DNA of 64,000 nt from Macrostomum lignano (taxonomy: Eukaryota): the NCBI GenBank assembly GCA_002269645.1, contig NIVC01002734.1:81223-145222 (forward strand), in the 5' to 3' direction. Under the pieces are notes generated by a model. That model was not told where the DNA came from and did no database searches. It worked only from the letters and a program-made list of their open reading frames with translations. This document shows, one piece after another, positions 158-42,591 of the stretch. A program made the position numbers and the translations under genes. Every line of letters starts with the position of its first letter. The first letter of the stretch is position 1.

Positions 158-203
158 GGCTACAGGTCAAAAGGGCGACAGATCAAAAGGGCGACAGATA
201 AAA
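158..203 (+). mobile_element. Outer part of a host MULE terminus (GGCTACAG followed by aaaagggcgacag subrepeats), interrupted by the giant element
   Basis: ggctacaggtcaaaagggcgacagatcaaaagggcgacagataaaa. The same subrepeat array resumes at 26547. Confidence 0.65.
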
Positions 204-418
204 GCATCAGTGTCACAAACACGTAGCAGAATAGGACACGTTTTTTTCGGCTTCAGAAGCGGTCAATACATGTTTTGTGTACGAAAATGTATTAGTAAGA
301 TGTATCACCCGTGACACAACGTAAGGCTCAAAAATACCTCTTCACAAGAGCCTTAACCTTTTTTTTAGCCTTTTCCTTGAGAGCATTTTCCTTAAAGGCA
401 GATAATACCCGTCGATAG
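204..418 (+). repeat. Left terminal inverted repeat (A), ~215 bp
   Basis: gtgtcacaaacacgtagcag...gataatacccgtcgatag is the reverse complement of 26333-26540. The outermost ~6 nt are imperfect (gcatca vs ccagcc). Confidence 0.9.
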
Positions 419-1329
419 GTATTTGTACCCATATTTTTATGCATTTTAAGGCTTCCGTGTACTCGCGTGTAGAAGTTGTCACGGGTGATGTTGGTAAACT
501 GTATAATTCAAATTCCATTCTAGCTAGCTATTAAAATAATTAGCCTGCGTCAGGATTAGCAAAAATTTAAAGGGCTAGTGACCAATGTAGCTAGTTCTAG
601 TCTAGGAAGTTGCGCATCTTACCTAGCTATCTTATTCTTGGTCTAATCGGCTAGGCCTATGATATGCTGTTCGACCTAAATATTAAATTTTACTACTATT
701 GCCATTTTGTTACAGATTTATTTAGGACCTACTGTTCTACCAATGTCAATGGCAATAGATTAAATTTAAAACTACCTAGGCAGCTAGGCCTAGTAATTTT
801 GCATTTAGTAATACAAAGCCTACTGTTTCACTGATTATTTTCTTCTATTGACTAGTAGCCCTAAATCTAAAATATTTTCTTTTCTTTTGTGTTATAAGGC
901 CTAGCCTTTACCTTTATGTTATATTATTAAAATGTTCTTTTGACTTAATAATAGTATTAATAAGCATCTTTTTTCTTTCTTGGATGTAAAGTTAATTTGG
1001 TCCTTCTTTGATTTAATTTAATTAGCTTATATTTTATACAATTTACTAAGGCTATAGGAATGGAAGTATTATAATATTTATATTAATTTTTTCTAACAAA
1101 TATTATAAATTCTGTTTTATAAGCATCAAAAATGGAAATATAAAACAAGATAATATAGAGCACATTCTATATTGAAATATTATGCACATTTTTAAATATT
1201 TTGATAAATAAGATTTCTCCACAAAATTAAAAATATTTTAGAAATTAGATTATAAACTTAAAGCCATAAACCATAGACTAGCAACTAGTTATTTACTACC
1301 ATTATAAAGTAAGTCATGATATCTATCTA

Positions 1330-3185: not shown

Positions 3186-3334
3186 TTTTCGTAGCTTTGT
3201 TAATTAAATTTAATTATCCGTTTTAGAAGTAAAAACGAATATTTCTCCTTCCTCTCTTCTGAATCTCCTCGATGGGGAGAAAAAGATAAGGCCAAGGCAA
3301 AACCTAACAATAGCAAACCAAGCAATGGAGACAA

Positions 3335-3840
3335 TGCTACGGAGGGCCCTGCCAACAGGATGAGTACGGCTTTCTACTTCCTACCGAACAAACAGCCGCC
3401 AATCGGAGAAGCGGCTGTCACTCCTGGGTTACGCCGACGACCTGGCGCTGCCCGCCTCTACGGCTGAGGGAGCCCCAGCGCATGCTAGACAGCCTGGTGG
3501 CAGCTGCGGCATCGGTCGGGCATCAACACCGAGAAGACGAGGTGATGACTGTACCCGCGGAGCTGCCTATCAAAATCACCTGCTGGGACGCCCGACGGTT
3601 GTGCAGCAGCTCTACCTCGTTGCACCCTCGCTGCGACTACCCAGCGAGACCTTCCGCAGGCGAAGACTTCAGCTGGTGGGCCACACCATCCGCGTGGAGG
3701 CCTACTGTTCTCAACCATTGAACCAGTGCAGGACGTCCTGCTGCTCACGATGCAGGGCCCCTGGCGCCGGGATTACGGCCGGGCGGGTCGCTACGCGGAT
3801 TGCCTGCTGGATGACGCTGGGTGATCGGCCAGGCGCACGC
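3335..3840 (+). pseudogene. Internally deleted RTE-like non-LTR reverse transcriptase fragment in arm B
   Basis: Reads LLGYADDLAL..STAEG...LDSLVAAAASVG..NTEKT.VMTVP with frameshifts. It aligns to the RT at 30774-32081. Confidence 0.8.
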
Positions 3841-4819
3841 TGTTGTCGCTTTCAGAGAGTTAGCACTGAAAGAACTGATCTGACACTGCCTCCCATTGTG
3901 AACTGTTACTCTTAACTCAACCTTGCCTTGTTGTTTTCTCTTCAGAATAATTTGCCCAGCTGCAAACTGTGATGGTGCATATCTCGTACTCGCGATTAAA
4001 AAATCTTATACTTCTTACTGTTTCACTGATTTAATTCCGAACCAACCAGGAAAACAAATTTATTTTTAATTCCGTGCATTTTTCTTGTGCTTTACTTTTA
4101 CTGATCGGTGTTAGTGCTATTTATTGTGTGTAATATTATCGAAAAATTCAATTTCCGATGTCATTATTTAGGAACTTCCGCTGTGCTGTATTAAAACTAT
4201 ATAGTACTTCCGCATGCACTGACGTAGCATTGCGCCAATAATTTTACATTGCGTGACGCAGGCGCCTAAACCAATCTTTTGTTGAATGCTACTAGCATAA
4301 TAATCCTTTGAAATACATTGTATTGCTATACTGCATTGCTTTTGATGATCTAAACGAGACTAGCTAGACTCCTCACTGATCCATACGAGTATGCTCCTCA
4401 GTCCTCAAGCGAACTACGAGTATATGGAAACGAGAGCAGATTGAGCTAGCAGCAAACTTAGTATTTGATCTTCGGATCACGGATAGAATCAAGGAAATGT
4501 AGATCTGGCACTTACACAAAAGTCCTTGATTTAATGGAATACAGCAATTTTCAATCTGTCACTTTTTCAACTTCAACTTTTTAAAATTTGGATTGGCGCA
4601 AGTCTCCTTTACATCGTCAAAAGCAATACTGGTTCCAATCCAAGAGAATGATTTGTTGATAACTGTATTTCACTCTTTGAGCTGAACGCTGTGTTTGACC
4701 ATTATTTTGTTGGTGTACAGCGTGCAACAGATCGCATGAATTGGTAAATTTCCTTTCATGCGTTCCTTTCATCCTATAATTCTGGTAGGGGGCGCTGCTG
4801 TTGCAAAGAGCGGCGGTGG

Positions 4820-5215
4820 ATAGCGGAGCTGTTGCAGGAGCTGCGGCAGATAGCGGAGCTGTTGCAGGAGCTGCGGCAGATAGCGGAGCTGTTGCAGGAG
4901 CTGCGGCAGATAGCGGAGCTGTTGCAGGAGCTGCGGCAGATAGCGGAGCTGTTGCAGGAGCTGCGGCAGATAGCGGAGCTGTTTCAGGAGCTGCGGCAGA
5001 TAGCGGAGCTGTTGCAGGAGCTGCGGCAGATAGCGGAGCTGTTGCAGGAGCTGCGGCAGATAGCGGAGCTGTTGCAGGAGCTGCGGCAGATAGCGGAGCT
5101 GTTGCAGGAGCTGCGGCAGATAGCGGAGCTGTTACAGGAGCTGCGGCAGATAGCGGAGCTGTTGCAGGAGCTGCGGCAGATAGCGGAGCTGTTACAGGAG
5201 CGGCGGCAGATAGCA
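4820..5215 (+). repeat. 30-bp tandem array (agcggagctgttgcaggagctgcggcagat), 13 copies
   Basis: Direct count; the ORF 4832-5299 holds 13 x QELRQIAELL-type decamers. Confidence 0.95.
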
Positions 5216-6599
5216 GATTTACTCGTATCCCAAAAATATTCGCCTTTAAAATTGCATACAGTGTTTGAAAAAATCAATTGTGGAGTTTTAGATGCTTGAA
5301 TCAATTTTGCTTAAGCCAGTGGCGTTTGCCGTACATGCCGTTCAATCTTTTTGTACATAAGGCCAAGCATAATTCTCAAATGGTAGATTTATCGCTTGGT
5401 TTCAAGTGCGTTAAGTCCTGTCACGAGTGCGCATAGCCTCCTCGCCTGTGTGGAGTTTTATTAGCCATTGATGAGGCTCCATGACCAGTAGCGCACTTGA
5501 TGCAGTAATCTTTACGCACGAATTAAGGAATCTTAAAAACGAATAACCAATTAAGGAATTTATTTGCGAAGCTGTTTTCTGATTTAGACAAGCGTATAGA
5601 CATTTAGAGGAATTGGAACTTACCATACTGCTAAGGAAAGGGAAAACAGCTTGTCTGCATGGAGTTCTCACAGGAAGCTGGAGTTTTACCATAAGACTAT
5701 AAGAGATATACATGTAAAGAGACGAAGAGTGGGGACTAAAATTTTGAGTTGGTCCCGGAAGAAGAGGTGACGAGAAGGACGACAAGAGCTGAAAATGTCT
5801 CGAACCACTACAGATCGACTAAGGCTTTAGACTGGCATGGAGTGACGGCGCTGGTTGATGAGCACTGGCTGTCTCCGGCGATTTTTTGACGAAGATCACA
5901 GGCAAACAATTCAAATAGACTTTTGGATTACCGGAGATTGATGGAGCTGGCTGAGAAGAAGCTGTACTGGTGGAGTTGACAAGAATATTTGCGCTCAGTA
6001 ACTCGAGAAGACCAGCTGAATTGAAGGGACAAAGCGAGAAGATCGTTCTTTATTTGGGCCTCTTTTGGAAGCTTGCTTCTGCGCACATACAGCCATGACC
6101 TGACCTGAAGGACCTGACAAGATGTAAGAAAGGTCTACTAGCTACATTTAGATGCCGGCGTCAAATTTCTCTACATAACAGCACCAACGGAACCTTGTTC
6201 CAGATAATGACCTGTGCCCCAACATTCTCAATGAGTGCCAGTCCAATCGCGTCTCCACCGAAGGAATTGCCAATCTGAGATAACGCTACACTCCCGTAGC
6301 TATCGTATCACGCGATATATCCTCAATGACCACTGCTGGAACCCTGGGTGAGCTCCACTGCTACCACTGACGGTTCAAAGCAGTCAATCAACACCGGCTT
6401 TGATGTTGGGATCTTTCTGAACGGGAGGGTTTCGCAACCAACGCTCAGTACACTGAGGTCAACTCCAGTGTTTTCCAAAATGAATTAGTTCTCGCCATCA
6501 GCTCCTGCACTGCAGAGCTTCTCGCCACTGGCGTAACCGGTAAGAGCATAACCGAAACCGGCCTTGTAGACTTGGCATGGCATCTGTGGCTGCAGCGTC

Positions 6600-6670
6600 A
6601 ATTCTAAAACATTCCTTGACATGTTGGGTTCCACCAACGAATTTACTCTTCACTGGGTTCCGGGGCATGT
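6600..6670 (+). pseudogene. Possible non-LTR RNase H remnant in loop 1
   Basis: Translates ...FLDMLGSTNEFTLHWVPGHV, matching the W(V/I)PGH motif. Very short. Confidence 0.4.
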
Positions 6671-7014
6671 GCAGGAGCGGTGGAAGATAGCAAAGCTGTT
6701 GCAAGGAGCCAGCGGTGGTAGATAGTGGAGCATGGCCGGCAGGGCGGGAGCGAAGAGTAGAAGTGGCAGGCTGCAGAAGCTTTTTGTTGTTTTGCATGGC
6801 TGCTAAACATGTAAATGCTGAAGTTAATTATGATAAATTGAGTACATGTGCGTGTGAGATGTGCTTTTTATTAGCCATAAACGGTATACAGTATGTACAG
6901 TACAGCTACATTAGCATACATATATATTGTAGTTCAATAACATTTTGACTCAAACGAGTCCGGCGTTCGAGTCACGACGATGTGCCATTTTTTTAATTTA
7001 TTTAGTCTCCAGAC

Positions 7015-7170
7015 CACAAGTCCTCAAGGATACGGTACAGCTGATCAAGGGAAGCTGGCTGCTGCCTCTGGATGTCCCACTCGACCCAGTTCCATATATT
7101 CTATATCGGATTGAGGTCTGGTGACTGTGCTGGCCAGTCCATGGTGCGAATGTTGTTCTCAGCTATGCTC
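7015..7170 (-). pseudogene. Tc1-family DDE transposase C-terminal fragment in loop 1, abutting arm B'
   Basis: Minus strand reads ENNIRTMDWPAQSPDLNPI*NIWNWVEWDIQRQQPASLDQLYRILED. The catalytic E of the WPxxSPDLNPIE motif is replaced by a TAG stop. Confidence 0.85.
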
Positions 7171-7389
7171 GGCTATGCGCACTCGTGACAGGACTTAACG
7201 CACTTGAAACCAAGCGATAAATCTACCATTTGAGAATTATGCTTGGCCTTATGTACAAAAAGATTGAACGGCATGTACGGCAAACGCCACTGGCTTAAGC
7301 AAAATTGATTCAAGCATCTAAAACTCCACAATTGATTTTTTCAAACACTGTATGCAATTTTAAAGGCGAATATTTTTGGGATACGAGTA

Positions 7390-8545
7390 AATCTGCTATC
7401 TGCCGCCGCTCCTGCAACAGCTCCGCTATCTGCCGCAGCTCCTGCAACAGCTCCGCTATCTGCCGCAGCTCCTGCAACAGCTCCGCTATCTGCCGCAGCT
7501 CCTGCAACAGCTCCGCTATCTGCCGCAGCTCCTGCAACAGCTCCGCTATCTGCCGCAGCTCCTGCAACAGCTCCGCTATCTGCCGCAGCTCCTGTAACAG
7601 CTCCGCTATCTGCCGCAGCTCCTGCAACAGCTCCGCTATCTGCCGCAGCTCCTGCAACAGCTCCGCTATCTGCCGCAGCTCCTGCAACAGCTCCGCTATC
7701 TGCCGCAGCTCCTGCAACAGCTCCGCTATCTGCCGCAGCTCCTGCAACAGCTCCGCTATCTGCCGCAGCTCCTGCAACAGCTCCGCTATCTGCCGCAGCT
7801 CCTGCAACAGCTCCGCTATCTGCCGCAGCTCCTGCAACAGCTCCGCTATCTGCCGCAGCTCCTGCAACAGCTCCGCTATCTGCCGCAGCTCCTGCAACAG
7901 CTCCGCTATCTGCCGCAGCTCCTGCAACAGCTCCGCTATCTGCCGCAGCTCCTGCAACAGCTCCGCTATCTGCCGCAGCTCCTGCAACAGCTCCGCTATC
8001 TGCCGCAGCTCCTGCAACAGCTCCGCTATCTGCCGCAGCTCCTGTAACAGCTCCGCTATCTGCCGCAGCTCCTGCAACAGCTCCGCTATCTGCCGCAGCT
8101 CCTGCAACAGCTCCGCTATCTGCCGCAGCTCCTGCAACAGCTCCGCTATCTGCCGCAGCTCCTGCAACAGCTCCGCTATCTGCCGCAGCTCCTGTAACAG
8201 CTCCGCTATCTGCCGCAGCTCCTGCAACAGCTCCGCTATCTGCCGCAGCTCCTGTAACAGCTCCGCTATCTGCCGCAGCTCCTGCAACAGCTCCGCTATC
8301 TGCCGCAGCTCCTGCAACAGCTCCGCTATCTGCCGCAGCTCCTGCAACAGCTCCGCTATCTGCCGCAGCTCCTGCAACAGCTCCGCTATCTGCCGCAGCT
8401 CCTGCAACAGCTCCGCTATCTGCCGCAGCTCCTGCAACAGCTCCGCTATCTGCCGCAGCTCCTGCAACAGCTCCGCTATCTGCCGCAGCTCCTGCAACAG
8501 CTCCGCTATCTGCCGCAGCTCCTGCAACAGCTCCGCTATCCACCG
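7390..8545 (-). repeat. 30-bp tandem array, 38 copies (mirror of 4820-5215)
   Basis: ORF 7310-8527 is M + 38 decamers + the same 24-aa tail as in arm B. Confidence 0.95.
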
Positions 8546-9518
8546 CCGCTCTTTGCAACAGCAGCGCCCCCTACCAGAATTATAGGATGAAAGGAACGCA
8601 TGAAAGGAAATTTACCAATTCATGCGATCTGTTGCACGCTGTACACCAACAAAATAATGGTCAAACACAGCGTTCAGCTCAAAGAGTGAAATACAGTTAT
8701 CAACAAATCATTCTCTTGGATTGGAACCAGTATTGCTTTTGACGATGTAAAGGAGACTTGCGCCAATCCAAATTTTAAAAAGTTGAAGTTGAAAAAGTGA
8801 CAGATTGAAAATTGCTGTATTCCATTAAATCAAGGACTTTTGTGTAAGTGCCAGATCTACATTTCCTTGATTCTATCCGTGATCCGAAGATCAAATACTA
8901 AGTTTGCTGCTAGCTCAATCTGCTCTCGTTTCCATATACTCGTAGTTCGCTTGAGGACTGAGGAGCATACTCGTATGGATCAGTGAGGAGTCTAGCTAGT
9001 CTCGTTTAGATCATCAAAAGCAATGCAGTATAGCAATACAATGTATTTCAAAGGATTATTATGCTAGTAGCATTCAACAAAAGATTGGTTTAGGCGCCTG
9101 CGTCACGCAATGTAAAATTATTGGCGCAATGCTACGTCAGTGCATGCGGAAGTACTATATAGTTTTAATACAGCACAGCGGAAGTTCCTAAATAATGACA
9201 TCGGAAATTGAATTTTTCGATAATATTACACACAATAAATAGCACTAACACCGATCAGTAAAAGTAAAGCACAAGAAAAATGCACGGAATTAAAAATAAA
9301 TTTGTTTTCCTGGTTGGTTCGGAATTAAATCAGTGAAACAGTAAGAAGTATAAGATTTTTTAATCGCGAGTACGAGATATGCACCATCACAGTTTGCAGC
9401 TGGGCAAATTATTCTGAAGAGAAAACAACAAGGCAAGGTTGAGTTAAGAGTAACAGTTCACAATGGGAGGCAGTGTCAGATCAGTTCTTTCAGTGCTAAC
9501 TCTCTGAAAGCGACAACA

Positions 9519-10025
9519 GCGTGCGCCTGGCCGATCACCCAGCGTCATCCAGCAGGCAATCCGCGTAGCGACCCGCCCGGCCGTAATCCCGGCGCCAGGG
9601 GCCCTGCATCGTGAGCAGCAGGACGTCCTGCACTGGTTCAATGGTTGAGAACAGTAGGCCTCCACGCGGATGGTGTGGCCCACCAGCTGAAGTCTTCGCC
9701 TGCGGAAGGTCTCGCTGGGTAGTCGCAGCGAGGGTGCAACGAGGTAGAGCTGCTGCACAACCGTCGGGCGTCCCAGCAGGTGATTTTGATAGGCAGCTCC
9801 GCGGGTACAGTCATCACCTCGTCTTCTCGGTGTTGATGCCCGACCGATGCCGCAGCTGCCACCAGGCTGTCTAGCATGCGCTGGGGCTCCCTCAGCCGTA
9901 GAGGCGGGCAGCGCCAGGTCGTCGGCGTAACCCAGGAGTGACAGCCGCTTCTCCGATTTGCGGCTGTTTGTTCGGTAGGAAGTAGAAAGCCGTACTCATC
10001 CTGTTGGCAGGGCCCTCCGTAGCAT
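9519..10025 (-). pseudogene. Mirror copy of the RTE-like RT fragment in arm B'
   Basis: Reverse complement of ~3335-3840. One SNP seen (ccgccaatc vs ccgcaaatc). Confidence 0.8.
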
Positions 10026-10184
10026 TGTCTCCATTGCTTGGTTTGCTATTGTTAGGTTTTGCCTTGGCCTTATCTTTTTCTCCCCATCGAGGAGATTCTG
10101 AAGAGAGGAAGGAGAAATATTCGTTTTTACTTCTAAAACGGATAATTAAATTTAATTAACAAAGCTACGAAAAAAGGGTGAGGC

Positions 10185-11720
10185 TGAAAAGGAGAATAGG
10201 GTGGGGACTGCAGGGGCGAAGGGTGGGCCAGTAGGGGCGAAGATGTTCATGCTGGGGGAGGAGAGGGTGAGGCTGGAGGGGAGGAGAGGCTGAGCACTTG
10301 AGGGGAGGAGAGGCTGAGCACTCGAGGGGAGGAGAGGTTGGGGTTGGGGAAAGAAGGCGGTGGTGCTGGAAGGAAGGATGGGGCTAAAGGGTAAGAGGGT
10401 GGGGCTAGAGGGTAGAAGAGGATGGAAGCTGGAGGGGAGCGTGGGCAGTAGGGGAAGAGGGCGGGGCTTGAGGGAAGGAGAGTCGGGCTGGAGGGAAGGA
10501 GGGTGGGGCTGGAGGGAAGGAGAGTGGGGCTGGAGGGAAGGAGAGTGGGGCTAGAGGAAAGGAGAGCAGGGCTGGAGGGAAGGAGGGTGTGGCTGGAGGG
10601 AAGGAGGGTAGGGCTAGAGGGAGGGAGGGTGGGGCTGGAGCTAAGGCGAGTGGGGCTGGAGGGAAAGGGGGTAGGGTTAGAGGGAAGGATGGGGTGGAAG
10701 GGTAAGAGGGTGGGGCTAGAGGGTGGAAGAGGATGGAAGCTGGAGGGGAGCGTGGGGCAGTAGAGGAAGAGGGCGGGGCTTGAGGGAAGGAGAGTGGGGC
10801 TGGAGGGAAGGAGTGTCGGGCTGGAGGGAAGGAGGGTGGGGCTGGAGGGAAGGAGAGTGGGGCTGGAGGGAAGGAGGGTAGGGCTAGAGGGAAGGAGGGT
10901 GGGCTAGAGGGAAGGCGAGTGGGGCTGGAGGGAAGGAGGGTAGGGCTAGAAGGAGGGAGGGTGGGTCCTGGAGGGAGGAGAGGGTGGAAGCTGGAAGGGA
11001 GGGTGGAAAGTCGAGGAGGAGGGCAGGGCTAGAGGGAAGGAGGGTGGGGATGGAGGGAAGGAGAGTGGGGCTGGAGGGAAGGAGGGTAGGGCTGGAGGGA
11101 AAGGGGGTAGGGTTAGAGGGAAGGATAGGGCTGAAGGGTTGGGCTAGAGGATAGAAGATGGAAGCTGGAGGGGAATGCGGGGTAGTAGGGGGAAAAGGTA
11201 GGGCTAGAAGGAAAGCAGGGTAGCAGGGAGGGAGGATAGGGCTGGAGGGAAGGAGGGTAGTGTTGCAGGGAGGGAGGGTAGGGCTGGAGAGAAGGAGGGT
11301 GGTGGTGCAGGGAAGGAGGGTAGGGCTTGAAAGGGAGGAGGGTGAGGCTAGAAAGAAGGATAAGACTGGAAGGTAGGATGAGACTAGAGTGGAGGAGGAT
11401 AGGGCTGGAAAGAAAAAAAGATGGGGCTAGAGGTTCAAAGAGGTTTAGGTGGGGCTGGAGGAAGAGGTGAGGCTAGGAGGGTTAGGCTGGAGAGGAGAAG
11501 AGAGTAAGGGCTAGAAATGAGGAAAGTAAGAACTAGAAAAGAGAAGGTAGGTAGTGAAGAGGAGAGAATAAGGATTCAAGGGGAAGACATGATGGGGCTA
11601 AAATAAAGAAAGGAGTAATATTGGAAGGAAGAGGAGGTAAATTTTTCAAAAAGAAAATAGGTCTAGAAAGAAGAACAGGATATAGATAGAGGTTAGAGAG
11701 GAAGAAAAGGTCATGACTAC
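10185..11720 (+). repeat. G-rich purine minisatellite in arm B' (G-quadruplex-type motifs)
   Basis: Repeats such as GGGGctggaGGGaaggaGGGtaGGG. Confidence 0.9.
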
Positions 11721-13457
11721 TAGATAGATATCATGACTTACTTTATAATGGTAGTAAATAACTAGTTGCTAGTCTATGGTTTATGGCTTTAAGTTTATAA
11801 TCTAATTTCTAAAATATTTTTAATTTTGTGGAGAAATCTTATTTATCAAAATATTTAAAAAATGTGCATAATATTTCAATATAGAATGTGCTCTATATTA
11901 TCTTGTTTTATATTTCCATTTTTGATGCTTATAAAACAGAATTTATAATATTTGTTAGAAAAAATTAATATAAATATTATAATACTTCCATTCCTATAGC
12001 CTTAGTAAATTGTATAAAATATAAGCTAATTAAATTAAATCAAAGAAGGACCAAATTAACTTTACATCCAAGAAAGAAAAAAGATGCTTATTAATACTAT
12101 TATTAAGTCAAAAGAACATTTTAATAATATAACATAAAGGTAAAGGCTAGGCCTTATAACACAAAAGAAAAGAAAATATTTTAGATTTAGGGCTACTAGT
12201 CAATAGAAGAAAATAATCAGTGAAACAGTAGGCTTTGTATTACTAAATGCAAAATTACTAGGCCTAGCTGCCTAGGTAGTTTTAAATTTAATCTATTGCC
12301 ATTGACATTGGTAGAACAGTAGGTCCTAAATAAATCTGTAACAAAATGGCAATAGTAGTAAAATTTAATATTTAGGTCGAACAGCATATCATAGGCCTAG
12401 CCGATTAGACCAAGAATAAGATAGCTAGGTAAGATGCGCAACTTCCTAGACTAGAACTAGCTACATTGGTCACTAGCCCTTTAAATTTTTGCTAATCCTG
12501 ACGCAGGCTAATTATTTTAATAGCTAGCTAGAATGGAATTTGAATTATACAGTTTACCAACATCACCCGTGACAACTTCTACACGCGAGTACACGGAAGC
12601 CTTAAAATGCATAAAAATATGGGTACAAATACCTATCGACACCCGTATATACACGTTAGGCGGTATAGAACACGGCAAAAACCGCCTATAAGGCAGTCCG
12701 TATCATGCTATATGATACAGTAGCATGCTATAGACCGCCTTTTTTATGCGCACAAGGGCCAAATATGGCACAAATTTGAACAGACGTTTCTGCTTATTTT
12801 TTAGTTCACTAATGCAAAGTAGGCCTAGCGATTTTACTAACCTACTATGCTACTATTCTCTAGTACAGTATTTTAGTGTCACTAGAATGCTAGATAAAAA
12901 TTAGGTCAGGATGACTTAGTTACAAGTGTAAGTGTTAACATTTAACATTATTTTATGTAGGCCTACTAGCTGTTTATTATTTCCACAATATTAATAGGCC
13001 CAGCGAATTAATATTAGAACAGGAGAACAATACAACTCGACTTAAAGTTCAATTAGTGAACTTGGATGGCGCTCAGTTTCAGTTTGTAGCTAGGCCTATG
13101 CACAATTTTGTAACTGAATGCAATAACTGTGTGACTAAGCTAGGCCTAGGGCTATATATTCAATATTCTTTTTTCTGAACCCTGAATCCTGAGTTTAGGA
13201 GAGAAACTATTTAGTAAAGCTAGCTATATTGATAGATATATTGAACAACCATAATTTAGGGTTCTAATATACTATACTAATAGCCTATTATATATATGTA
13301 GTACAACTAGCTGAGCTAGCATAAAATTCCATAAATGGATGTATTTTTATTTTTTATTTTATTGATAAATTGGGTTCTATTCTACTATTTTATGTTATAG
13401 GTTAAGCCTGAAATTAGTATTTAGTATTTAGAGGTTCTATATTTTTTGTTTTTTTAA

Positions 13458-16270
13458 CCTTCCCTTTCCCCATAACCTGCTAGCCTTCCCTACATGGTTA
13501 CACCCTACTGCCCTTTACCATACCTTACCCCAATGGCCTTCCTACAACACTTGCTACCTTTTCTTATCAATACAAGCCTTTCCCATACCTTGCTGCCCTT
13601 CATTGTCTTTTATAGGCCTTTTCCATACCCTGCTGTCTTTCACAAACCTTGCTGCTCTTCAATGTATCCTGCTTGGCCTTCATTGTATCTTGTTGGCCTT
13701 CCCACATGGCCACACCTTGCTGGCTTTTCCCATATCCTGCTAGCCTTCCCACACCCTACTGTCTTTCCCATACCCTGCTGTCTTTCCCCTACCCTGCTGT
13801 CCTTCCCCACACCCTTGCCAGCCTTCCTTACTCCTTGCTGGCCTTCCCCACACCCTGCCAGCTTCCCCACATCCTGCTGGCCTTCCCTACTCCCTGCTAC
13901 CCTTCCCCACACCCTGCTGTCCTTCCCCATCAATGCAGGCCTTCCTCACTCCCTGTTGGCATTCCCCACACCCTGCCGGCCTTCCCCACATCCTGCTGGC
14001 CTTCCCTACTCCTTGCTACCCTTCCCCACACCCTGCCGGCCTTCCCCACATCCTGCTGGCCTTCCCTACTCCCTGCTACCCTTCCCCACATCCTGCTGTC
14101 CTTCCCCACACCCTGCTTGTCTTCACTACCAATGCAGGCTTTCCCTACACCCTGCTGTCCTTCCCCATACCCTGCTGTCTTTCCCCTACCCTGCTGTCCT
14201 TCCCCATCAATGCAGGCCTTCCTCACTCCCTGCTGGCATTCCCCACACCCTGCCGGCCTTCCCCACACCCTTGCCAGCCTTCCTTACTCCTTGCTGGCCT
14301 TCCCCACACCCTGCTAGCTTCCCCACATCCTGCTCGCCTTCCCTACTCCCTGCTACCCTTCCCCACACCCTGCTGTCCTTCCCCACATCCTGCTGGCCTT
14401 CCCTACTCCTTGCTACCCTTCCCCACACCCTGCCGGCCTTCCCCACACCCTGCCGGCTTCCCCACATCCTGCTGGCCTTGCCTTCCCTACTCCCTGCTAC
14501 CCTTCCCCACACCCTGCTGTCCTTCCCCACACCCTGCTTGCCTTACACTACCAATGCAGGCTTTCCCTACACCCTGCTGTCCTTCCCCATCAATGCAGGC
14601 CTTCCTCACTCCCTGCTGGCATTCCCCACACCCTGCCGGCCTTCCCCACATCCTGCTGGCCTTCCCTACTCCCTGCTACCCTTCCCCACACCCTGCTGTC
14701 CTTCCCCATCAATGCAGGCCTTCCTCACTCCCTGCTGGCATTCCCCACACCCTGCCGGCCTTCCCCACATCCTGCTGGCCTTCCCTACTCCTTGCTACCC
14801 TTCCCCACACCCTGCCGGCCTTCCCCACACCCTGCCGGCTTCCCCACATCCTGCTGACCTTCTCTACTCCCTGCTACCCTTCCCCACACCCTGCTGTCCT
14901 TCCCCACACCCTGCCGGCCTTCCCCACACCCTGCCTGCTTCCCACATCCTGCTGGCCTTCCCTACTCCCTGCTACCCTTCCCCACATCCTGCTGTCCTTC
15001 CCCACACCCTGCTTGTCTTCACTACCAATGCAGGCTTTCCCTACACCCTGCTGTCCTTCCCCAATTCCCTGCTGTCTTTCCCCTACCCTGCTGTCCTTCC
15101 CCATCAATGCAGGCCTTCCTCACTCCCTGCTGGCATTCCCCACACCCTGCTGGCCTTCCCCACACCCTTGCCAGCCTTCCTTACTCCTTGCTGGCCTTCC
15201 CCACACCCTGCTAGCTTCCCCACATCCTGCTCGCCTTCCCTACTCCCTGCTACCCTTCCCCACACCCTGCTGTCCTTCCCCATCAATGCAGGCCTTCCTC
15301 ACTCCTTGCTACCCTTCCCCACACCCTGCCGGCCTTCCCCACACCCTGCCGGCTTCCCCACATCCTGCTGACCTTCTCTACTCCCTGCTACCCTTCCCCA
15401 CACCCTGCCTGCTTCCCCTCATCCTGCTGGCCTTCCCTACTCCCTGCTACCCTTCCCCACACCCTGCTGTCCTTCCCCACACCCTGCTAATCTTCACTAC
15501 CAATGCAGGCTTTCCCTACACCTTTCTTTCCTTCCCCATCAATGCAGGCCTTTCCCACTCCCTTCTGGCATTCCCCACACCCTGCCGGCTTCCCCACTTC
15601 CTGCTGGCCTTCCCTACTCCCTGCTACCCTTCCCCACATCCTGCCGGCCTTCCCCACACCCTGCCGGCTTCTCCACATCCTGCCGGCTTCTCCACATCCT
15701 GCCGGCCTTCCCTACTCCCTGCTACCCTTCCCCACACCCTGCTGTCCTTCCCCACACCCTGCTTGCCTTACACTACCAATGCAGGCTTTCCCTACACCCT
15801 GCTGTCCTTCCCCATCAATGCAGGCCTTTCCCACTCCCTTCTGGCATTCCCCACACCCTGCCGGCTTCCCCACTTCCTGCTGGCCTTCCCTACTCCCTGC
15901 TACCCTTCCCCACACCCTGCTGTCCTTCCCCACACCCTGCTTGCCTTACACTACCAATGCAGGCTTTCCCTACACCCTGCTGTCCTTCCCCATCAATGCA
16001 GGCCTTTCCCACTCCCTGCTGGCATTCCCCACACCCTGCCAGCCTTCCCTACTGCTGGCCTTCCCTTTTTCCTGCTACCCTTCCCCACACCCTGCCGGCC
16101 TTCCCCATACCCTGCTGTCATTTCCCACACCCTGCCACTCTACCTCTCACAGGCTACCCCTCCCAGACAGCCCTCCCAGACAGCCCTCCCAGACAGCCCC
16201 TCCAGGCTAACCCAACTCTACCCCTCCCAGGCAGCCCTTCCGGGCTTCATCTCCCACTCAACCTCTTCCA
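13458..16270 (+). repeat. C-rich minisatellite (cttccccacaccctgctggc-type) with higher-order duplications in arm C
   Basis: Repeating ~20-bp variants; source of the long P/L/H/C-rich ORFs. Confidence 0.9.
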
Positions 16271-16272
16271 GA

Positions 16273-16605
16273 AGCGGAGGACGATCGCAGGACTGTCTGC
16301 TGCCTGCCGCTTCGGCTGCAGTGACCGCCGGCTCAAGCGGAGGACGATCGCAGGACTGTCTGCTGCCTGCCGCTTCGGCTGCAGTGACCGCCGGCTCAAG
16401 CGGAGGACGATCGCAGGACTGTCTGCTGCCTGCCGCTTCGGCTGCAGTGACCGCCGGCTCAAGCGGAGGACGATCGCAGGACTGTCTGCTGCCTGCCGCT
16501 TCGGCTGCAGTGACCGCCGGCTCAAGCGGAGGACGATCGCAGGACTGTCTGCTGCCTGCCGCTTCGGCTGCAGTGACCGCCGGCTCAAGCGGAGGACGAT
16601 CGCTG
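16273..16605 (+). repeat. 63-bp GC-rich tandem array, 5 full copies plus a partial
   Basis: Unit gcggaggacgatcgcaggactgtctgctgcctgccgcttcggctgcagtgaccgccggctcaa. About 2.7 mirrored copies at 22545-22716. Confidence 0.95.
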
Positions 16606-18333
16606 CTCCGCGTGCTATCATCTACTAGTGTTGTGAGTGCTAAGGGCGATCGAAGGACTAATGAAGAAGCATATTATCCGATTTCTTTTAGAGGAGATCT
16701 ATGCCAGTTATTTATCTTCTCGTTTAATTAGCAGTGAGTAAAAAAATACGACAATTATATGCTGCCGCTTATAGACTCTACAATATCATCAGCAGAATAC
16801 GTAAATTGAAGTCGTTTGAAACAAGAGTACGTAGATGGTAAGATGGCATGTATTTAGCTTCTTCCTAGTGAAATCAGTGAATTGTGTTGGTCGCTTACAG
16901 AACCTATTCAGCTTCTCCGCTCATAGTCACTCCAGCATCAAGTGCTAACAATGCAGATTAGCTATGAACTGTATTGGAATGCTTTGCATCATGCATTTGC
17001 ATTTTAAATACAAGGACTTTTTCTCTCGTTCATTGGCAGGTATCGAGATGAGACAAAGCAATGTGCATTATGCTGCTGCCGATGCACAGGACGCAAGAGT
17101 GCACGCAGGATCCTCGTGAGGTGAAAGAAGACGACGGTGACGACTACGACATGTATGACTATTCAGCCACATTGGACAGAAATTAGCTGTTAGCCGACGT
17201 AGCCGTATAAATGTTTGGTCACACTTCTCTGTGCCCGTGGCGTATGCAACATTTAATCCATGACCTCTTTGCAATATTGCACTACCATCAAACGCTGACG
17301 CTCTTTTTCTCGCTCTGTAATGCTGTAACCAGTTTTTTGTCCCCCCCCTTGTCGAGTTTGAGAGAACTATGCAGCGCATTTTTTCGACAAGAGTTTTTCA
17401 TTGTCTTTTGTCAATGTGCAGTTTTACGGGTACATGTATATACTTAACTGAGTATTGTAAACATGTGCCTCTAAAATAAAACAGACTTCACTGCTTTTAA
17501 CTATGCTTTTTACGATAATTCGCTCTGTCATGTCCTGAAACATTCCTGTTTTATCGAATTCTCTTTTGATGATGACACAAATATGGTCACAAAGAATAGT
17601 GGGAGGTAGAGCCATATGGCGCGAGGTATAAAGTGATTTTACATGATTTTACATGATTTTACGAGAGGTATGATTTTACATTACAGTAGTCTCAATAGTT
17701 TATCTCCCCCTATTGGCCTCCCTTTCTCCTTCTCGCCCTCTGTCTCTGCAGCACCTGTTGGTTAAAAATGAGAGGAAAGCTCGGCAAGAAAAGCCTCTGT
17801 GGAAAAGTCTCGTGCTCTCATAGCCTGACATCCTGCCACTTTTTAAATAGCCATGACTTTCCTGGTACATGGACATTTACATACGTAAGTTGTTTCCATC
17901 GGATTGAGACATGATTTATAACTAGTATAAGTATATTAGTAATAGTAAATTCAGTCAGTCTTATCATATACGAGCAGTGGCGGATCTAGAATTTCATTTT
18001 GGGAGGGGGCGGTCCAAGTTTGGGAGGCCAACATGAGTAATGAGGGGCACCAATTATGAGGGGGTGCAAAAATGCTGTACTGCTGAAAATAACGAACGGG
18101 AAACACGGATTGCATGTTATTAATTTAAATACGTACGAGTATTTGATTTGAGAAGCACAATATCGGGGAAAAGTTTTGCCTTCTCTGTGACGTGCTTGGC
18201 AAGTGCACATGCACTAGCTACATGGGGGGGTTCATAAGACCGAAATTTCACAACGCCGAAACCATACTTCACAAGACCGATACTTCATAAGACCGAAATT
18301 TCACAACGGCGGAGTTTTAACAAAAGCTCTCAG

Positions 18334-18390
18334 CCAATCGGAAAATTCAGCGTGCGTTAAAACAAATCGGCCGCGTGAGAGCTATAAAAG
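18334..18390 (+). promoter_or_regulatory. Candidate Pol II promoter (CCAAT box plus TATA box) in loop 2
   Basis: agCCAATcgg at 18334 and TATAAAAG at 18383, about 50 bp apart. Motif evidence only. Confidence 0.4.
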
Positions 18391-19890
18391 GCGGCAACTC
18401 TAACTGCGCTCGAAATATCTCCCGGTTTTTGTCCTTGCCAATGCCTGGGGCGCTCAACTTGGCCTGATACGGCCTTCTGGCTCTTCCCCCTACGGTCCTG
18501 CCGATCTGATCCTCCTTCCCCCGGCAGTTTCGTCTTCAAAAGCTAAGTTCCCCCTGAGAAGCATCATCAATATCTCCCGGCAGTGATCTAAGAGCATGAG
18601 CAGCAACGACAACCGGCAAGTGAGGAGCAACAGCGTCGCGCGTCAGTTAAGATCAGCAGCAGCATACCATCTGAGTGTTTCGGTCTCTGTGGATTCCTTG
18701 GCTACCGGCAGATAGGTCCTCTGATTGGTTGGGTGAGAGGCTCTTTTGACCTGCTTAACTGGGTGCACCCTTTGTCTGACCCCTTCCTAGGTAGTCTGAT
18801 AGGATTTGCACTTTTGCTTACTTGCTTTTGTGTGCCAATCTCGAGGCAGAAGTGTCAGTTAATATTAAAATTAGCCATTTGCTCGAACTCAATCTAAAGT
18901 GTTTAGGATTGCGGATTAAGTGAGAAAGCTAAATCTGGAAGTTAAAGACTTGGCGTTTTCATTCTTTTTCGCAATACCAGCTGAGATGAGCGGCTTAATC
19001 TAGAGGCAGAGGTCACGGTGGACCGGAAGCGGCACAGTTCCCAGTCAATCAGTCGATCTAAGAAATCATTATGTTAAGCATGCAAATTAAGTGCCAGACT
19101 GGCGCTTTCGCGCTGTCTCAGGCAGCTAAGCGGCTAAAACGAGATAAATATTAGTCTGAAGGTCTCCAAAAGTGACAATACATCTACACCATCGTTATCT
19201 GTCGACGTGTTTACACATTTAGTGCCAAAAGCGTGCAGTTACGTGTACTTATGCATGTACTTCTGGGAATTCGGTAATGAAATAGTACATTTAGTAGTGT
19301 ATGAAGGCTCGCCAGCGCAAGAACCCCCTGCAAAAGTCCTCTCTGTCCCTGCATGGCCAATGCGATCTTAGTCCCAGCAGCGTCCCTTCTATTCGGCTAT
19401 GACTTCGAGATAGACAGCTAAAAGACACTAGATGGCAGGTAAGTGCAGTGCCCCTCTAGTCGGAAGTCCGATTTCGATAGCTCCGGTTTGGTGAGCCGGG
19501 GCGCACGGACTGGTGGTAGCGGGTTAGTTAATCTGCGGATTAGCTAATCTCTACCTTTCAAATTCTCCCTGCTTGTCTCTCGCTGTCTTCTCCTAGCTAT
19601 AGGACCTTGCTGCTCGCCCACAATCTAGCTACCATGGGGCTGACCATCTGACAGGAGTGAGAGGCCAGAGTTCTAAGTGATTCATTTCCGAATTCTGAGG
19701 CCCGAAGCTATAGGCTTAGAAAGGCCGAACCCATCAAATTGAAGAGAATGTCAGTTTTGATGAGCTACAGGTAAGTTTATCCCTTGCTCAAATTTCTGCC
19801 GAGGAAAAAGCCTGATCTATTTACTACATAAGTGGCTACGTTTACACAAAAATGCACAAAAACTTGACTAAAAATGCATTCTGCTCGCTG

Positions 19891-20734
19891 AGCCGTGGAG
19901 TGGATTTCAGCTGGACTACAGTACAGTATGGCTAGGAAAGAAGTGCATTTGGGATAACTCCAGTAGTGGAATATAAAGGAAACTCCAGCATTGGAGCGAG
20001 TACTGGATCGCTGATATAAATCCAGCATTGGAGCATCGGTGCTGGCTCCAATGCCGGAATTTCCTTATGCTCTAATGCTGGAGTCATACATGTATCAGCT
20101 CCAATACTGGAGCTTCGGTTTTGGCACCGGAAAAGTGCAAATAACTCTACCGGACGACCTTCTGGCGCTCTGGGACCGGCGCCAATCGACTCAGGGGGCC
20201 GAAATCTATCAGAAAATGTTGGTCGCATAGGCGCGAAAGGCACTCTGCAAATGCCAAAAAAATGTATCCCCGGCCTAGGTGTACTTGTCAAATTCACACC
20301 TTATCAACCTGCTGCCGGTAAAGATTCTGCAAGTAAACCGGCTGTCCTGCAACTTGCAACTAATCAAAACTACGCAAGCCGCTGAGCAGTGTCGCACTAA
20401 ACTGCACGCTAAAATCTACCATCAATCTATAGTATTGGAGTCTACAAGGCTTCAATGCTGGAGTTTCCTTTATATTCCACTTTTGTACCTTTGTACTGGA
20501 GTTATGCCAAAATGCACTTCTTTCCGAGCCATACTGTTCCCCAAAACGATAGATTTGGCGCATGAAATTATACTCGATAATAGGTAAAGAAATTCTGCAC
20601 CAGCAGTACTTTACCGCTTGTCAAAATATTGAATAGTTGCTGAGATATCGATGCTACAATTTCGGTGAATTTCCAGTGCTCTTCAAATCAGCGCAAAATA
20701 CGTTTTTTAGTCCAGCTCAATCCACTTCACGGCT
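19891..20734. mobile_element. Degenerate MITE-like inverted-repeat element in loop 2
   Basis: agccgtggagtggatttcagctggacta mirrors 20705-20734, and ~19920-20005 mirrors ~20440-20548. No TSD found. Confidence 0.5.
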
Positions 20735-20934
20735 TCGTGTGGATTCACTTGCAATCAGTAAAAGTGGCAAAAGTAGAGATCTGTTTTGGTTGTTAAATAT
20801 TAAGCTTGCATGCAAAGGTATTATTAACTACCAAATAGCAGCACACAGGGACTCAATTCCAGTGTTTTTTAGAGCGAGGTGCTTGCCATCAGCTCCTGTG
20901 TGGTGCCAGAGCTGTTCGAAGGCAGCTTAGCTTG

Positions 20935-21200
20935 CAGTCAGAAATTTATTTTTCACTCCGACAGCCAAGCAGCCCTTCTGCCCGTCTGCTGCAGCACCAC
21001 CAACTCCAGATCTGTCCTGGACTGCAACGCCCGGCTCCATGCAGGGCTTGCGCTGGGCAACCAGCAGGTGGAGCTCAAATTGACCCCGGCCTACGATGTC
21101 ATGGTTTCCATCCCGGCAAGGCTGGCTCCGCCGGCACGCTTCTGGACCGGGCCCAGGGGCCCCCACCCCTGCGCCTCGGTGATTAACTCCCGCGTCAAGC
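20935..21200 (+). pseudogene. Non-LTR retrotransposon RNase H fragment in loop 2
   Basis: KFIFHSDSQAALL...NSRSVLDCNARL...NQQVELKLTPAY matches the retroelement RNase H pattern DSQAAL ... V.L.W.P.H, degenerate. Confidence 0.6.
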
Positions 21201-22526
21201 ACTGGGCTGACTCTTAGCATCTCCGCAGGTGGCAGGATCAACACTCGAAATTGCAGGAAATCCCGTGCTGCTGTCCCCCTGCGTAGAGCCTTCCTTAGGC
21301 TCAACCTCAGGGATCTTAAGAGCATTTACATGTACATGGGCCCTCTCCGGGCATGCATGGCTGCTTCTCTCGCCACCGCTTCCTTCAGGGCCAGGTACTT
21401 GAGGAGCCGTGCGCGGTGCCCCAAGCTCTTCTGCCGCTCAACAGGCAGTAAAAACGCAGAACAATTTATCTGCCACTACCTGGTCTTCACCACTCACTCA
21501 CCCCGGCCCAACTCTCCGATGCTTGCAGGCCCGAGAGCATATCGATGCTCACCCGGTACCTCAGCTGAGTTTTCCCCACCGCCGGTGAGGAGGACCGTGC
21601 TGCAAGCGAGACCGACGCCCCCGGAAGGGACATCACTTCGATGGAAGTCATTCATGGTCGCCAGAGGCTAGCGGAATTGGGCGGTCTTCTTCGCCTCCTG
21701 ATCGCTGCATCCGCCGGATGATCTCCTCTGCAGCTAGGTCAAACATACTCGTGTGCATACTGGCACTAATCCATGATTGAACATACATGTAGGTGAAATA
21801 CTTGCGTGAGTTGCGTCAGTGTCAATACGCTCTTGCTCCAAAATACTTGAGCTCTTGTGCTAATCTCCATTCTAGCCGTGCTTGCTTTTGCTAGTGCGAG
21901 CTTGTTCATGCAACCCAATTTTGGTGCTATTTTTAAGCCTAGCTTACTTGAGGTAGCAAATTAGCCAGACTATGTGGATAGTTTGCCATTAGCTAAGGAT
22001 AGTTTAACATTCTGAGCAGGATGAGAGAATTTTCAGGCCGCCGCGATCCGAAATTCAAACCGCGACTTGCAGTCTGGTCAATTCTTTTGCACGAACGAAA
22101 TTTCTCAAATAAGTGTAACACAAAGTGAAAAAATTAGAAAACTACTTGGACGATTTGACCTTTCAAAACTGCACTAAAATGCGTGGCGCAACAGCCAAAT
22201 TACCGGGTGACATCGATCGAGCAAAAGTGCTTTTTTATTTAAGTGCAAAAATTACAGCTCTCAATAAACGCAAAGGTAATGTGCCGCTTGGATAGAAAAA
22301 CTTTATGCAGCTACGCAAAAACAACTGAAGTAATACGCGCAACATAGAGCTGCCCGCAAAAACTTCAGCTACACAGCAACTACAAACCGCTGGTACAGGA
22401 CTGCGCATCGCCAGGGTGAGTCCCACGAACACGCATCACTTCAGACAATCGTTCAGATAATAAACATAGTTATTAAATAACCCTCACTTTGCCACTGTTC
22501 GTTAAGGTCGAAACGGAACCGGACTG

Positions 22527-26329: not shown

Positions 26330-26332
26330 CTG

Positions 26333-26546
26333 CTATCGACGGGTATTATCTGCCTTTAAGGAAAATGCTCTCAAGGAAAAGGCTAAAAAAAGGTTAAGGC
26401 TCTTGTGAAGAGGTATTTTTGAGCCTTACGTTGTGTCACGGGTGATACATCTTACTAATACATTTTCGTACACAAAACATGTATTGACCGCTTCTGAAGC
26501 CGAAAAAAACGTGTCCTATTCTGCTACGTGTTTGTGACACGGCTGG
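26333..26546 (-). repeat. Right terminal inverted repeat (A')
   Basis: Reverse complement of 204/210-418. Confidence 0.9.

Positions 26547-42162: not shown

Positions 42163-42243
<81 letters not shown>

Positions 42244-42539: not shown

Positions 42540-42591
<52 letters not shown>

What the first reader, a model, noticed from the sequence alone, without database searches (positions are those of the whole stretch)
12625..12660. Central junction looks like two sibling foldbacks fused, leaving two independently invertible segments
Seen: the left end reads TIR...cccgtcgatag|gtatttg (arm B). The right end, read inward, is TIR...cccgtcgatag|cagccgtatatac (arm C). The centre reads caaatac-ctatcgac-ac-ccgtatatac, i.e. 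arm B' plus only 8 nt of the TIR, then arm C. Inference: two elements A-B-S1-B'-A' and A-C-S2-C'-A' sharing the same ends lay in tandem and lost the inner TIR pair. The resulting layout (two loops, each bracketed by its own inverted repeat) is formally like the invertible L/S segments of HSV-1 and could flip to give four isomers. The analogy is architectural only; no viral genes are seen.
Basis: partly seen in the sequence, partly recalled or inferred. Interest (0 to 1): 0.72.

Follow-up and report, generated by a model that had tools for sequence, protein, structure and literature searches.

The report
Foldback transposon nested inside another
The "fused junction" is the left edge of a 13.7-kb hairpin-shaped (foldback) transposon that inserted into the arm of a related 12.6-kb foldback and duplicated 8 bases of its target, so it is an ordinary nested insertion and not a fusion that lost two ends.

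Summary
The fusion-plus-deletion reading is not the best explanation. The 8 nt "ctatcgac" at the centre (12633-12640) is a direct repeat of "ctatcgac" at 26333-26340. The two copies flank the right-hand palindrome (12641-26332) exactly, as a target-site duplication would. Removing that palindrome and one repeat copy restores the right arm of the left-hand element. The 40-mer across the healed joint occurs exactly, reverse-complemented, in the uninterrupted left arm at 391-430. The inner element has its own termini. All four ends match CA[GCT]C[CA]GT[AG]T, which occurs nowhere else in the window, and the first 70 nt of inner and outer ends are significantly alike. The whole 26.3-kb structure carries a 10-bp duplication, cagataaaag. 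I found no coding capacity, so both elements look non-autonomous. TSDs of 8 and 10 bp fit Mutator-type foldbacks, and a FLYWCH-MULE gene lies next door, but that link is unproven. Loop inversion is plausible and untested. This is an ordinary finding: a new member of a known kind.

The parts
195..204 (+). Left copy of the 10-bp target-site duplication (cagataaaag) of the outer foldback
   Evidence: CAGATAAAAG occurs only at 195 and 26547 in the window. It lies inside a 15/16-bp array and carries a junction variant (gat-aaaag, lacking the c) seen only in these two copies.
205..5438 (+). Left arm of the outer foldback. It holds a 21-bp C-rich array (1690-3108) and a 30-bp array (4797-5214).
   Evidence: Inverted-repeat map, arrays, terminus pattern.
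411..418 (-). Uninterrupted copy of the inner element's target (ctatcgac on the minus strand) in the left arm. It serves as an internal 'empty site'.
   Evidence: The 40-mer spanning the healed joint is found exactly at 391-430.
5439..7170 (.). Loop (middle segment) of the outer foldback, 1,732 bp. No coding capacity was detected.
   Evidence: The arms end at 5438/7171. Pfam found nothing on the long stop-free stretches.
7171..12640 (-). It holds the 30-bp array at 7395-8562 and the 21-bp array at 10251-11360.
   Evidence: Unique parts are 99.9-100% identical to the left arm.
12633..12640 (+). Left copy of the 8-bp direct repeat ctatcgac, the target-site duplication of the inner foldback. It is 7 bp if the final c belongs to the terminus.
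12641..16622 (+). The terminus is (C)ACCCGTATATACACG. It holds a 20-bp C-rich array (13710-16135) and a 63-bp array (16272-16603).
16623..22526 (.). Loop (middle segment) of the inner foldback, 5,904 bp. No coding capacity was detected.
   Evidence: no Pfam family; no MULE-like tblastn hit; no Rfam family or tRNA.
22527..26332 (-). Right arm of the inner foldback. Its terminus, reverse-complemented, reads CAGCCGTATATACACG. It carries about 480 bp (22720-23197) that the left arm lacks.
26333..26340 (+). Right copy of the 8-bp direct repeat ctatcgac.
26341..26545 (-). Its terminus, reverse-complemented, reads CAGCCGTGTCAC.
   Evidence: Joined to 12241-12640, it matches the left arm over 606 nt with 2 mismatches (terminal positions 3 and 5) and 1 homopolymer indel.
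26547..26556 (+). Right copy of the 10-bp target-site duplication (cagataaaag) of the outer foldback. One extra g at 26546 lies between the terminus and the TSD.

Best explanation
Window 205-26545 holds two related, non-autonomous foldback-type DNA transposons, one nested in the other. The outer element is 12,641 bp of its own sequence, with arms of 5.2 and 5.7 kb and a 1.7-kb loop. It inserted into a 15/16-bp minisatellite and made a 10-bp target-site duplication. The inner element is 13,692 bp (12641-26332), with arms of 4.0 and 3.8 kb and a 5.9-kb loop. It later inserted, by cut-and-paste, into the right arm of the outer element about 205-213 bp from that element's end, and duplicated 8 bp (ctatcgac). 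The 'central junction' at 12625-12660 is therefore the host arm, then the left TSD copy, then the left terminus of the inner element. What is shown: the two direct repeats, the restored host arm, the shared terminal motif, the 70-nt similarity of the ends, and the absence of detectable coding sequence. What is inferred: mobilisation in trans by a DDE transposase, most likely Mutator-like given the 8-10-bp TSDs; arm identity kept high by recent origin or arm-to-arm gene conversion; and possible loop inversion by recombination between arms.
For: (1) CTATCGAC lies at 12633-12640(+) and 26333-26340(+), exactly abutting the ends of the right palindrome. The only other copy, at 411-418(-), is the intact target in the left arm. 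(2) Joining 12621-12640 to 26341-26360 gives a 40-mer found exactly, reverse-complemented, at 391-430. The reconstructed right arm matches the left arm over 606 nt with 2 terminal mismatches and 1 homopolymer indel. (3) The four termini read CATCAGTGT, CAGCCGTGT, CACCCGTAT and CAGCCGTAT. The pattern CA[GCT]C[CA]GT[AG]T occurs nowhere else on either strand of the window. (4) The first 70 nt of the outer and inner ends align with score 14. Shuffles gave -10.7 +/- 4.2, with 0 of 2000 reaching the observed score, and 3 of 5000 random window 70-mers did (maximum score 66, so probably draws overlapping the termini themselves). (5) Similarity between the left end and the right end, read inward from the termini, is near-perfect for ~209-214 nt (2 terminal mismatches and 1 homopolymer indel) and then none at all. 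That is the signature of an insertion boundary, not of family divergence. (6) The outer TSD cagataaaag occurs only at 195 and 26547. (7) TSDs of 8-10 bp are reported for the foldback families Tetris (PMC4079207) and Tm1 (PMC3169594). (8) No Pfam family, MULE fragment, Rfam family or tRNA was found inside.
Against: Only one copy of each element is available. No other copy could be found, because the collections that can be scanned by DNA pattern found no copy, and the host genome appears not to be among them. Stand-alone inner elements are therefore predicted, not observed. The two TSDs differ in length (7-8 versus 10-11 bp), with +/-1 nt of ambiguity at both elements. That is at the wide end of what one transposase family usually produces. 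The outer TSD lies in a tandem array, where flanking similarity is partly expected, although the shared junction variant argues for a real duplication. Superfamily assignment is indirect, because no autonomous partner with matching termini was found. The neighbouring MULE shows no detectable matching TIR.
Confidence: 0.9

Rival explanations
1. Two sibling foldbacks, A-B-S1-B'-A' and A-C-S2-C'-A', lay in tandem. The inner A'/A pair and the spacer were then deleted, for example by excision of the hairpin they would form, leaving 8 nt of A'.
For: It also predicts B' followed by a few nt of A' and then C. The head-to-head A'/A palindrome would be unstable, which follows from established knowledge of palindrome instability. 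Families with shared outer ends and unrelated inner arms have been described for the sea-urchin TU elements; this is from my memory and was not checked here.
Against: It needs an extra event whose endpoints must fall 8 nt into A' and exactly at the A|C boundary, which happens to reproduce a TSD of canonical length. It leaves the outer-terminus-like start of 'C' (CAGCCGT...ACACGT...ATAGRACACG) as coincidence, against 0 of 2000 shuffles. It requires C-type elements to carry two terminal modules in tandem. It requires A to be essentially identical (one homopolymer indel in the 209-bp repeat; two more differences at terminal positions 3 and 5) between two elements whose arms otherwise share nothing. 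It would also need the 26-kb fusion to have transposed as a unit to explain the outer TSD.
Confidence: 0.04
2. Reverse nesting. The left palindrome (B...B') is the insert, sitting between A and C of a host element A-C-S2-C'-A'.
For: A directly abuts C at the right end.
Against: The sequences flanking B...B' are gtcgatag on the left and ctatcgac on the right. These are inverted, not direct, so there is no TSD. The extra 8 nt after B' would be unexplained. The B ends (gtatttgtaccc...) lack the CA[GCT]C[CA]GT terminal motif, whereas the C ends have it.
Confidence: 0.01
3. Not transposition at all. The two palindromes arose in place by inverted segmental duplication or replication template switching (fold-back priming, MMBIR) inside one TIR element.
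For: Large near-perfect palindromes can arise this way, by established knowledge. The junction has 1-nt microhomology (c).
Against: This does not predict an exact 8-bp direct repeat at both ends of the right palindrome. It does not predict a perfectly restorable host arm, or transposon-like termini shared with the outer element.
Confidence: 0.02
4. Assembly artefact, with chimeric fold-back reads or mis-joined repeats creating the palindromes or the junction.
For: Unique arm segments are 99.7-100% identical. The region is extremely repeat-rich.
Against: The arms differ in array copy number and by a 480-bp indel. Both elements have intact TSDs and coherent termini, which a mis-join would not create.
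Confidence: 0.03

Closest known systems
Foldback (FB) transposons of Drosophila, and Tetris of D. virilis
   Same: Very long inverted arms built of a short unique terminal domain, internal tandem arrays and an inner domain. A non-coding middle segment of variable content. Array copy number differs between the two arms. Tetris has TSDs of 8-10 bp, and most foldbacks are attributed to the Mutator superfamily (PMC4079207).
   Different: No sequence similarity was tested or expected. The arms here are longer (3.8-5.7 kb, against up to ~1.7 kb for Tetris). The terminal 200 bp is unique sequence, not arrays. The host appears to be a different, unidentified animal.
Tm1, the Mutator/Foldback family of root-knot nematodes
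   Same: Foldback-like composite TIRs, mostly non-coding members, 8-10-bp TSDs (most often 9), short asymmetric motifs at the extreme ends, and a nested element found within a copy (PMC3169594).
   Different: Tm1 elements are about 1 kb with 14-bp repeat TIRs. An autonomous MULE-like partner is known for Tm1, but none is shown here.
Nested insertions and multi-TIR Mutator-like elements of plants
   Same: One element inserted into or next to the long TIR of another gives structures with more than two termini. Alternative use of inner and outer termini has been proposed (PMC3310237).
   Different: Those cases have duplicated copies of the same TIR in tandem. Here the two related elements are different, both TSDs are intact, and the history can be read directly.
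Galileo (P superfamily) chimeric and extended-TIR copies
   Same: Foldback-like long TIRs with arrays, independent expansion and contraction in each arm, and chimeric copies (PMC3573991).
   Different: Galileo makes 7-bp TSDs, and its chimeric copies lack matching TSDs and arise by ectopic recombination. Here both TSDs match, so no recombination needs to be invoked.
HSV-1 L/S invertible segments
   Same: Only the drawing: unique segments bracketed by inverted repeats, which in principle could flip.
   Different: There are no viral genes, no 'a' sequences and no evidence of isomers. The layout is nested (an element inside an arm), not two segments side by side sharing ends.

Membership tests
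Nested transposon insertion (one TIR element inside another) | Direct repeat of the target (TSD) immediately flanking the insert's inverted termini | tested here: met
   ctatcgac at 12633-12640 and 26333-26340, both on the + strand and abutting the palindrome ends.
Nested transposon insertion (one TIR element inside another) | Removing the insert and one TSD copy restores a continuous host sequence | tested here: met
   The healed 40-mer is found exactly at 391-430 in the other arm. Over 606 nt there are 2 terminal mismatches and 1 indel.
Nested transposon insertion (one TIR element inside another) | The insert exists as an independent mobile element elsewhere | not testable with these tools
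   The host genome is not in any searchable collection. DNA scans and protein-route searches found nothing.
Foldback-type DNA transposon | Long inverted arms making up most of the element, with a non-coding middle segment | tested here: met
   The arms make up 86% of the outer element and 57% of the inner. No Pfam hits in loops or arms.
Foldback-type DNA transposon | Tandem repeat arrays inside the arms, varying in copy number between arms | tested here: met
   21-, 30-, 20- and 63-bp arrays with unequal copy numbers.
Foldback-type DNA transposon | TSD of about 8-10 bp | tested here: met
   8 bp (7-8) for the inner element and 10 bp (10-11) for the outer.
Mutator-like (MULE) superfamily | Mobilised by a MULE DDE transposase whose autonomous element shares the termini | tested here: inconclusive
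   A FLYWCH+MULE gene lies 240 bp from the right end. No TIR matching the foldback termini was found around it, and its own ends are not resolved within the window.
   The inner element has its own termini, homologous to the outer terminus but different from it. The right-hand 'A' is accounted for as the distal stub of the outer arm.
Invertible-segment system (HSV L/S, 2-micron, plastid IR type) | Coexisting orientation isomers of the bracketed segments | not testable with these tools
   Only a single assembled sequence is available, with no reads and no second haplotype.

The most novel reading that the evidence does not exclude
The nested pair may be more than a passive fossil. Its four related termini, with both right ends CAG... 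and both left ends CAY..., could offer a single transposase several substrates: the inner element alone, the whole 26 kb, or hybrid outer/inner end pairs. Its three sets of near-identical inverted arms could flip the loops and the whole interior, giving up to eight arrangements in the population. The two insertion sites, a transposon-associated minisatellite and the arm of a sibling, might also reflect homing of this family into the ends of related elements.
Probability: 0.1. Interest if true: 0.4.

Novelty: new member of a known kind. Interest (0 to 1): 0.15.

Why it matters
It corrects a tempting but wrong reading. When an inverted-repeat element appears to share its end with a neighbour and a few bases of that end sit at the junction, the first thing to check is whether those bases are a direct repeat, that is, a target-site duplication. 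Here they are. The structure is a textbook nested insertion whose history can be read base by base, because the outer element's other arm preserves the empty target. It also documents an apparently undescribed family of very large foldback elements: 12.6 and 13.7 kb, with 4-5.7-kb arms that are at least 99.7% identical, and defined termini. That is useful for repeat annotation and for checking assemblies of this minisatellite-rich genome. It does not open a new mechanism.

Tried and rejected
I first worked through it, including hairpin excision and abortive gap repair as ways to remove A'/A. I rejected it once the direct repeat, the restored arm and the shared termini were seen.
- **Reverse nesting (B inserted into an A-C element).** Rejected: the flanking octamers are inverted, not direct, and the B ends lack the terminal motif.
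- **Homology between B and C arms or loops.** None was found beyond one 72-nt match at 71%. The 21-mer and 20-mer C-rich array units are not significantly alike, with 343 of 1000 shuffles at least as good.
- **Other copies in the window.** There are none. The A terminus 20-mer and the terminal pattern occur only at the four ends.
- **Other copies in public collections.** Two metagenome scans found nothing. The genome-contig scan gave two bacterial hits to an 18-mer. My estimate is about 17 hits expected by chance in 596 Gb, so I treated these as chance.
- **Protein-database route to other copies.** The window's MULE ORF is not on record. An ORF from the inner arm has no relatives.
- **Coding capacity.** Stop-free stretches of at least 75 aa (plus one of 77 aa) from both loops and the inner unique part of the outer arm gave no credible Pfam family. 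tblastn with 36 MULE homologues hit only 26781-28373.
- **RNA genes.** No Rfam family or tRNA.
- **Termini of the neighbouring MULE, and of a 42%-identical homologue locus (L003).** Nothing interpretable came out.

Full report
**Observation**

The window was read at the centre, the left end and the right end.
- Left end: ...gataatacccgtcgatag|gtatttgtaccc.
- Right end read inward: ...cccgtcgatag|cagccgtatatacacg.
- Centre, at 12621-12655: gggtacaaatac-ctatcgac-ac-ccgtatatacacg.

Repeat mapping gives three inverted-repeat systems that tile 205-26545 without any gap:
- An outer pair, 210-418 / 26333-26540, 209 bp at 99.5%.
- A left palindrome, 411-5438 / 7171-12640, with loop 5439-7170.
- A right palindrome, 12640-16622 / 22527-26332, with loop 16623-22526.

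The arms carry minisatellites whose copy numbers differ between partners. The 30-bp unit has 13.9 versus 38.9 copies, the 63-bp unit 5.3 versus 2.8, and the 20-bp unit 122.6 versus 104. The 21-bp arrays span 1690-3108 versus 10251-11360. One arm of the right palindrome has about 480 bp that the other lacks. The unique parts of the arms are 99.7-100% identical. This is a real structure, not a fold-back read artefact.

**What the junction is**

The same octamer at the inner edge of the right-hand 'A' (26333-26340) lies on the same strand. The two copies are therefore a direct repeat, and they abut the two ends of the right palindrome exactly. That is the anatomy of a target-site duplication.

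I tested this by joining the flanks. The sequence 12621-12640 plus 26341-26360 gives GGGTACAAATACCTATCGAC|GGGTATTATCTGCCTTTAAG. Its reverse complement occurs exactly at 391-430 in the left arm. Over 606 nt the reconstructed right arm differs from the left arm by two mismatches, at terminal positions 3 and 5, and one homopolymer indel. The third and last CTATCGAC in the window, at 411-418 on the minus strand, is the intact target in the uninterrupted left arm. The outer element thus carries its own 'empty site' control.

**The inner element has its own ends, related to the outer ones**

The four termini read:
- CATCAGTGTCAC (position 205, plus strand)
- CAGCCGTGTCAC (position 26545, reverse complement)
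- CACCCGTATATAC (position 12640, plus strand)
- CAGCCGTATATAC (position 26332, reverse complement)

The pattern CA[GCT]C[CA]GT[AG]T occurs at these four places and nowhere else on either strand of the 64 kb. The first 70 nt of the outer and inner ends align with conserved blocks CAGCCGT, ACACGT, ATAG-R-ACACG and GTC. The global score is 14, against -10.7 +/- 4.2 for shuffles. None of 2000 shuffles reached it, and 3 of 5000 random window 70-mers did. Those three, with a maximum score of 66, are probably draws that overlapped the termini themselves.

Beyond those ~70 nt the two elements share nothing. The arms and loops gave one weak 72-nt match, and the C-rich array units are not significantly alike. 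The two foldbacks are 'siblings' in the sense of belonging to one family by their ends. They do not share the 209-bp 'A'.

**The outer insertion**

The whole structure is flanked by cagataaaag at 195-204 and 26547-26556, the only two copies in the window. The site lies in a 15/16-bp array, aaaagggcgacag(a)t(c), that runs in the same orientation on both sides. Some flanking similarity is therefore expected. However, the duplicated decamer contains a junction variant (gat-aaaag, without the c) that is otherwise unique, so a real duplication is needed to explain it. One g at 26546 sits between the terminus and the TSD. Equivalently, this is an 11-bp TSD with one mismatch.

**Why nested insertion beats fusion plus deletion**

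Both models put B' next to a few bases of A' and then C. The fusion model needs:
- Two independent elements with an essentially identical A (only a homopolymer indel and the two terminal differences) but otherwise unrelated arms.
- A deletion that keeps a TSD-sized 8 nt on one side and ends at the exact A|C boundary on the other.
- A chance resemblance of the first 70 nt of 'C' to the outer terminus.
- Transposition of the 26-kb product as a unit, to account for the outer TSD.

Nested insertion needs one canonical event and predicts all of these features. By my own rough reasoning, not a computed statistic, the endpoint coincidence costs the fusion model a factor of about 10^-4 and the terminus similarity less than 10^-3.

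Reverse nesting (B inserted into an A-C element) fails because its flanking octamers are inverted, not direct, and the B ends lack the terminal motif. In-place palindrome formation by template switching does not predict TSDs or shared termini.

**What kind of element, and how it would move**

Neither loop nor arm shows coding capacity. No credible Pfam family was found on the long stop-free stretches. There is no MULE-like tblastn signal outside 26781-28373, and no Rfam family or tRNA. Both elements are therefore non-autonomous and would depend on a transposase supplied in trans that recognises the conserved terminal ~70 nt. That dependence is inference.

TSDs of 8 and 10 bp fall in the ranges reported for Tetris, with 8-10 bp (PMC4079207), and for Tm1, with 8-10 bp and most often 9 (PMC3169594). 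[quoted passage not shown]

A FLYWCH-plus-MULE transposase gene lies 240 bp beyond the right end, at 26781-28439 on the minus strand (Pfam, tblastn). Its best homologues are about 42% identical and come from bivalves, crustaceans and a sea star. The outer foldback sits in the short-repeat array downstream of that gene. I could not find a TIR around that gene that matches the foldback termini, and its far end may lie outside the window. The partnership is a hypothesis, not a result.

**Inversion**

Inverted repeats of several kb with at least 99.7% identity are known substrates for homologous recombination, and near-identity of the arms is what gene conversion between them would produce; both statements rest on established knowledge. 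With the nested layout there are three inverted pairs, so in principle three invertible intervals: loop 1, loop 2, and everything between the outer ~205-bp stubs. Nothing in a single assembled sequence tests this.

**Searches for other copies**

The decisive check is to find stand-alone copies, and it could not be done. The terminus 20-mer and a 22-mer of A are absent from the metagenome collection. An 18-mer gave two bacterial hits, which by my estimate is within chance expectation. The window's MULE ORF is not on record. An ORF from the inner arm has no relatives in the protein collection. The host species remains unidentified.

**Verdict**

The junction is the boundary of an ordinary nested transposon insertion with an 8-bp target-site duplication. 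The elements are new members of a known kind (foldback, probably Mutator-type). Interest is low.

Noticed in passing
window 26781-28439 (-): A FLYWCH zinc-finger plus MULE-domain transposase gene in three coding blocks, with short introns or a frameshift near 27040-27075. Its best homologues are only about 42% identical (bivalves, crustaceans, sea star). The outer foldback is inserted in the 15/16-bp array just downstream of it.
   Followed up: partly
window 26-63 (+), 174-197 (-), 26557-26594 (-): The short motif TGTC[AG]CC occurs three times on the plus strand, then five times on the minus strand once the foldback is removed. This is a small inverted set of tandem repeats around the outer insertion site, possibly the subterminal region of the MULE. 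The window starts inside it.
   Followed up: partly
window 205-211, 12640-12646, 26326-26332, 26539-26545: In both foldbacks the right terminus reads CAG and the left reads CAY. Position 3 differs in both elements, and position 5 also differs in the outer one. The arms are otherwise 99.7-99.9% identical. This could be functional left/right end asymmetry, or an edge effect of gene conversion.
   Followed up: partly
window 22720-23197: About 480 bp (27/54-bp repeats plus ~240 bp of unique sequence) is present only in the right arm of the inner foldback. The left arm goes straight from '...caacctcttccaga' into the 63-bp array.
   Followed up: partly
window 305-316 (+), 477-488 (-), 12563-12574 (+), 26434-26445 (-): The 12-mer TCACCCGTGACA occurs twice in each outer arm, in opposite orientations about 170 bp apart. 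About 0.1 occurrences are expected by chance. It is a candidate protein-binding site.
   Followed up: no
window 51796-54275 and 62120-63943: A third foldback-like structure. Its inverted arms (52166-54275 / 62120-63583, ~90-93%) are full of 32-bp repeats. Outside the arms lie 22/23-bp arrays in inverted orientation that share GGCGCCATGAG. The ~7.8-kb interior holds fibrinogen-like ORFs (56798-58134) and more arrays. Its ends lack the CA[GCT]C[CA]GT motif, so it belongs to a different family or is an inverted segmental duplication.
   Followed up: partly
window 30774-32081 (-): A 435-aa ORF with a reverse-transcriptase look (YADD motif), probably a non-LTR retrotransposon fragment. This is my reading of the translation and was not run against Pfam.
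   Followed up: no
window 29652-30356 (-): An ORF with a weak PAN-domain match (E = 9e-5), possibly an exon of a host gene between the MULE and the RT fragment.
   Followed up: no
window 34042-34828, 38850-39456, 41410-41870, 42161-42777, 43413-43900, 44136-48397, 50683-51243, 58773-59344, 59796-61409: The rest of the window is unusually rich in minisatellite arrays, including a ~4.2-kb A-rich array with a 23-bp period at 44136-48397.
   Followed up: no
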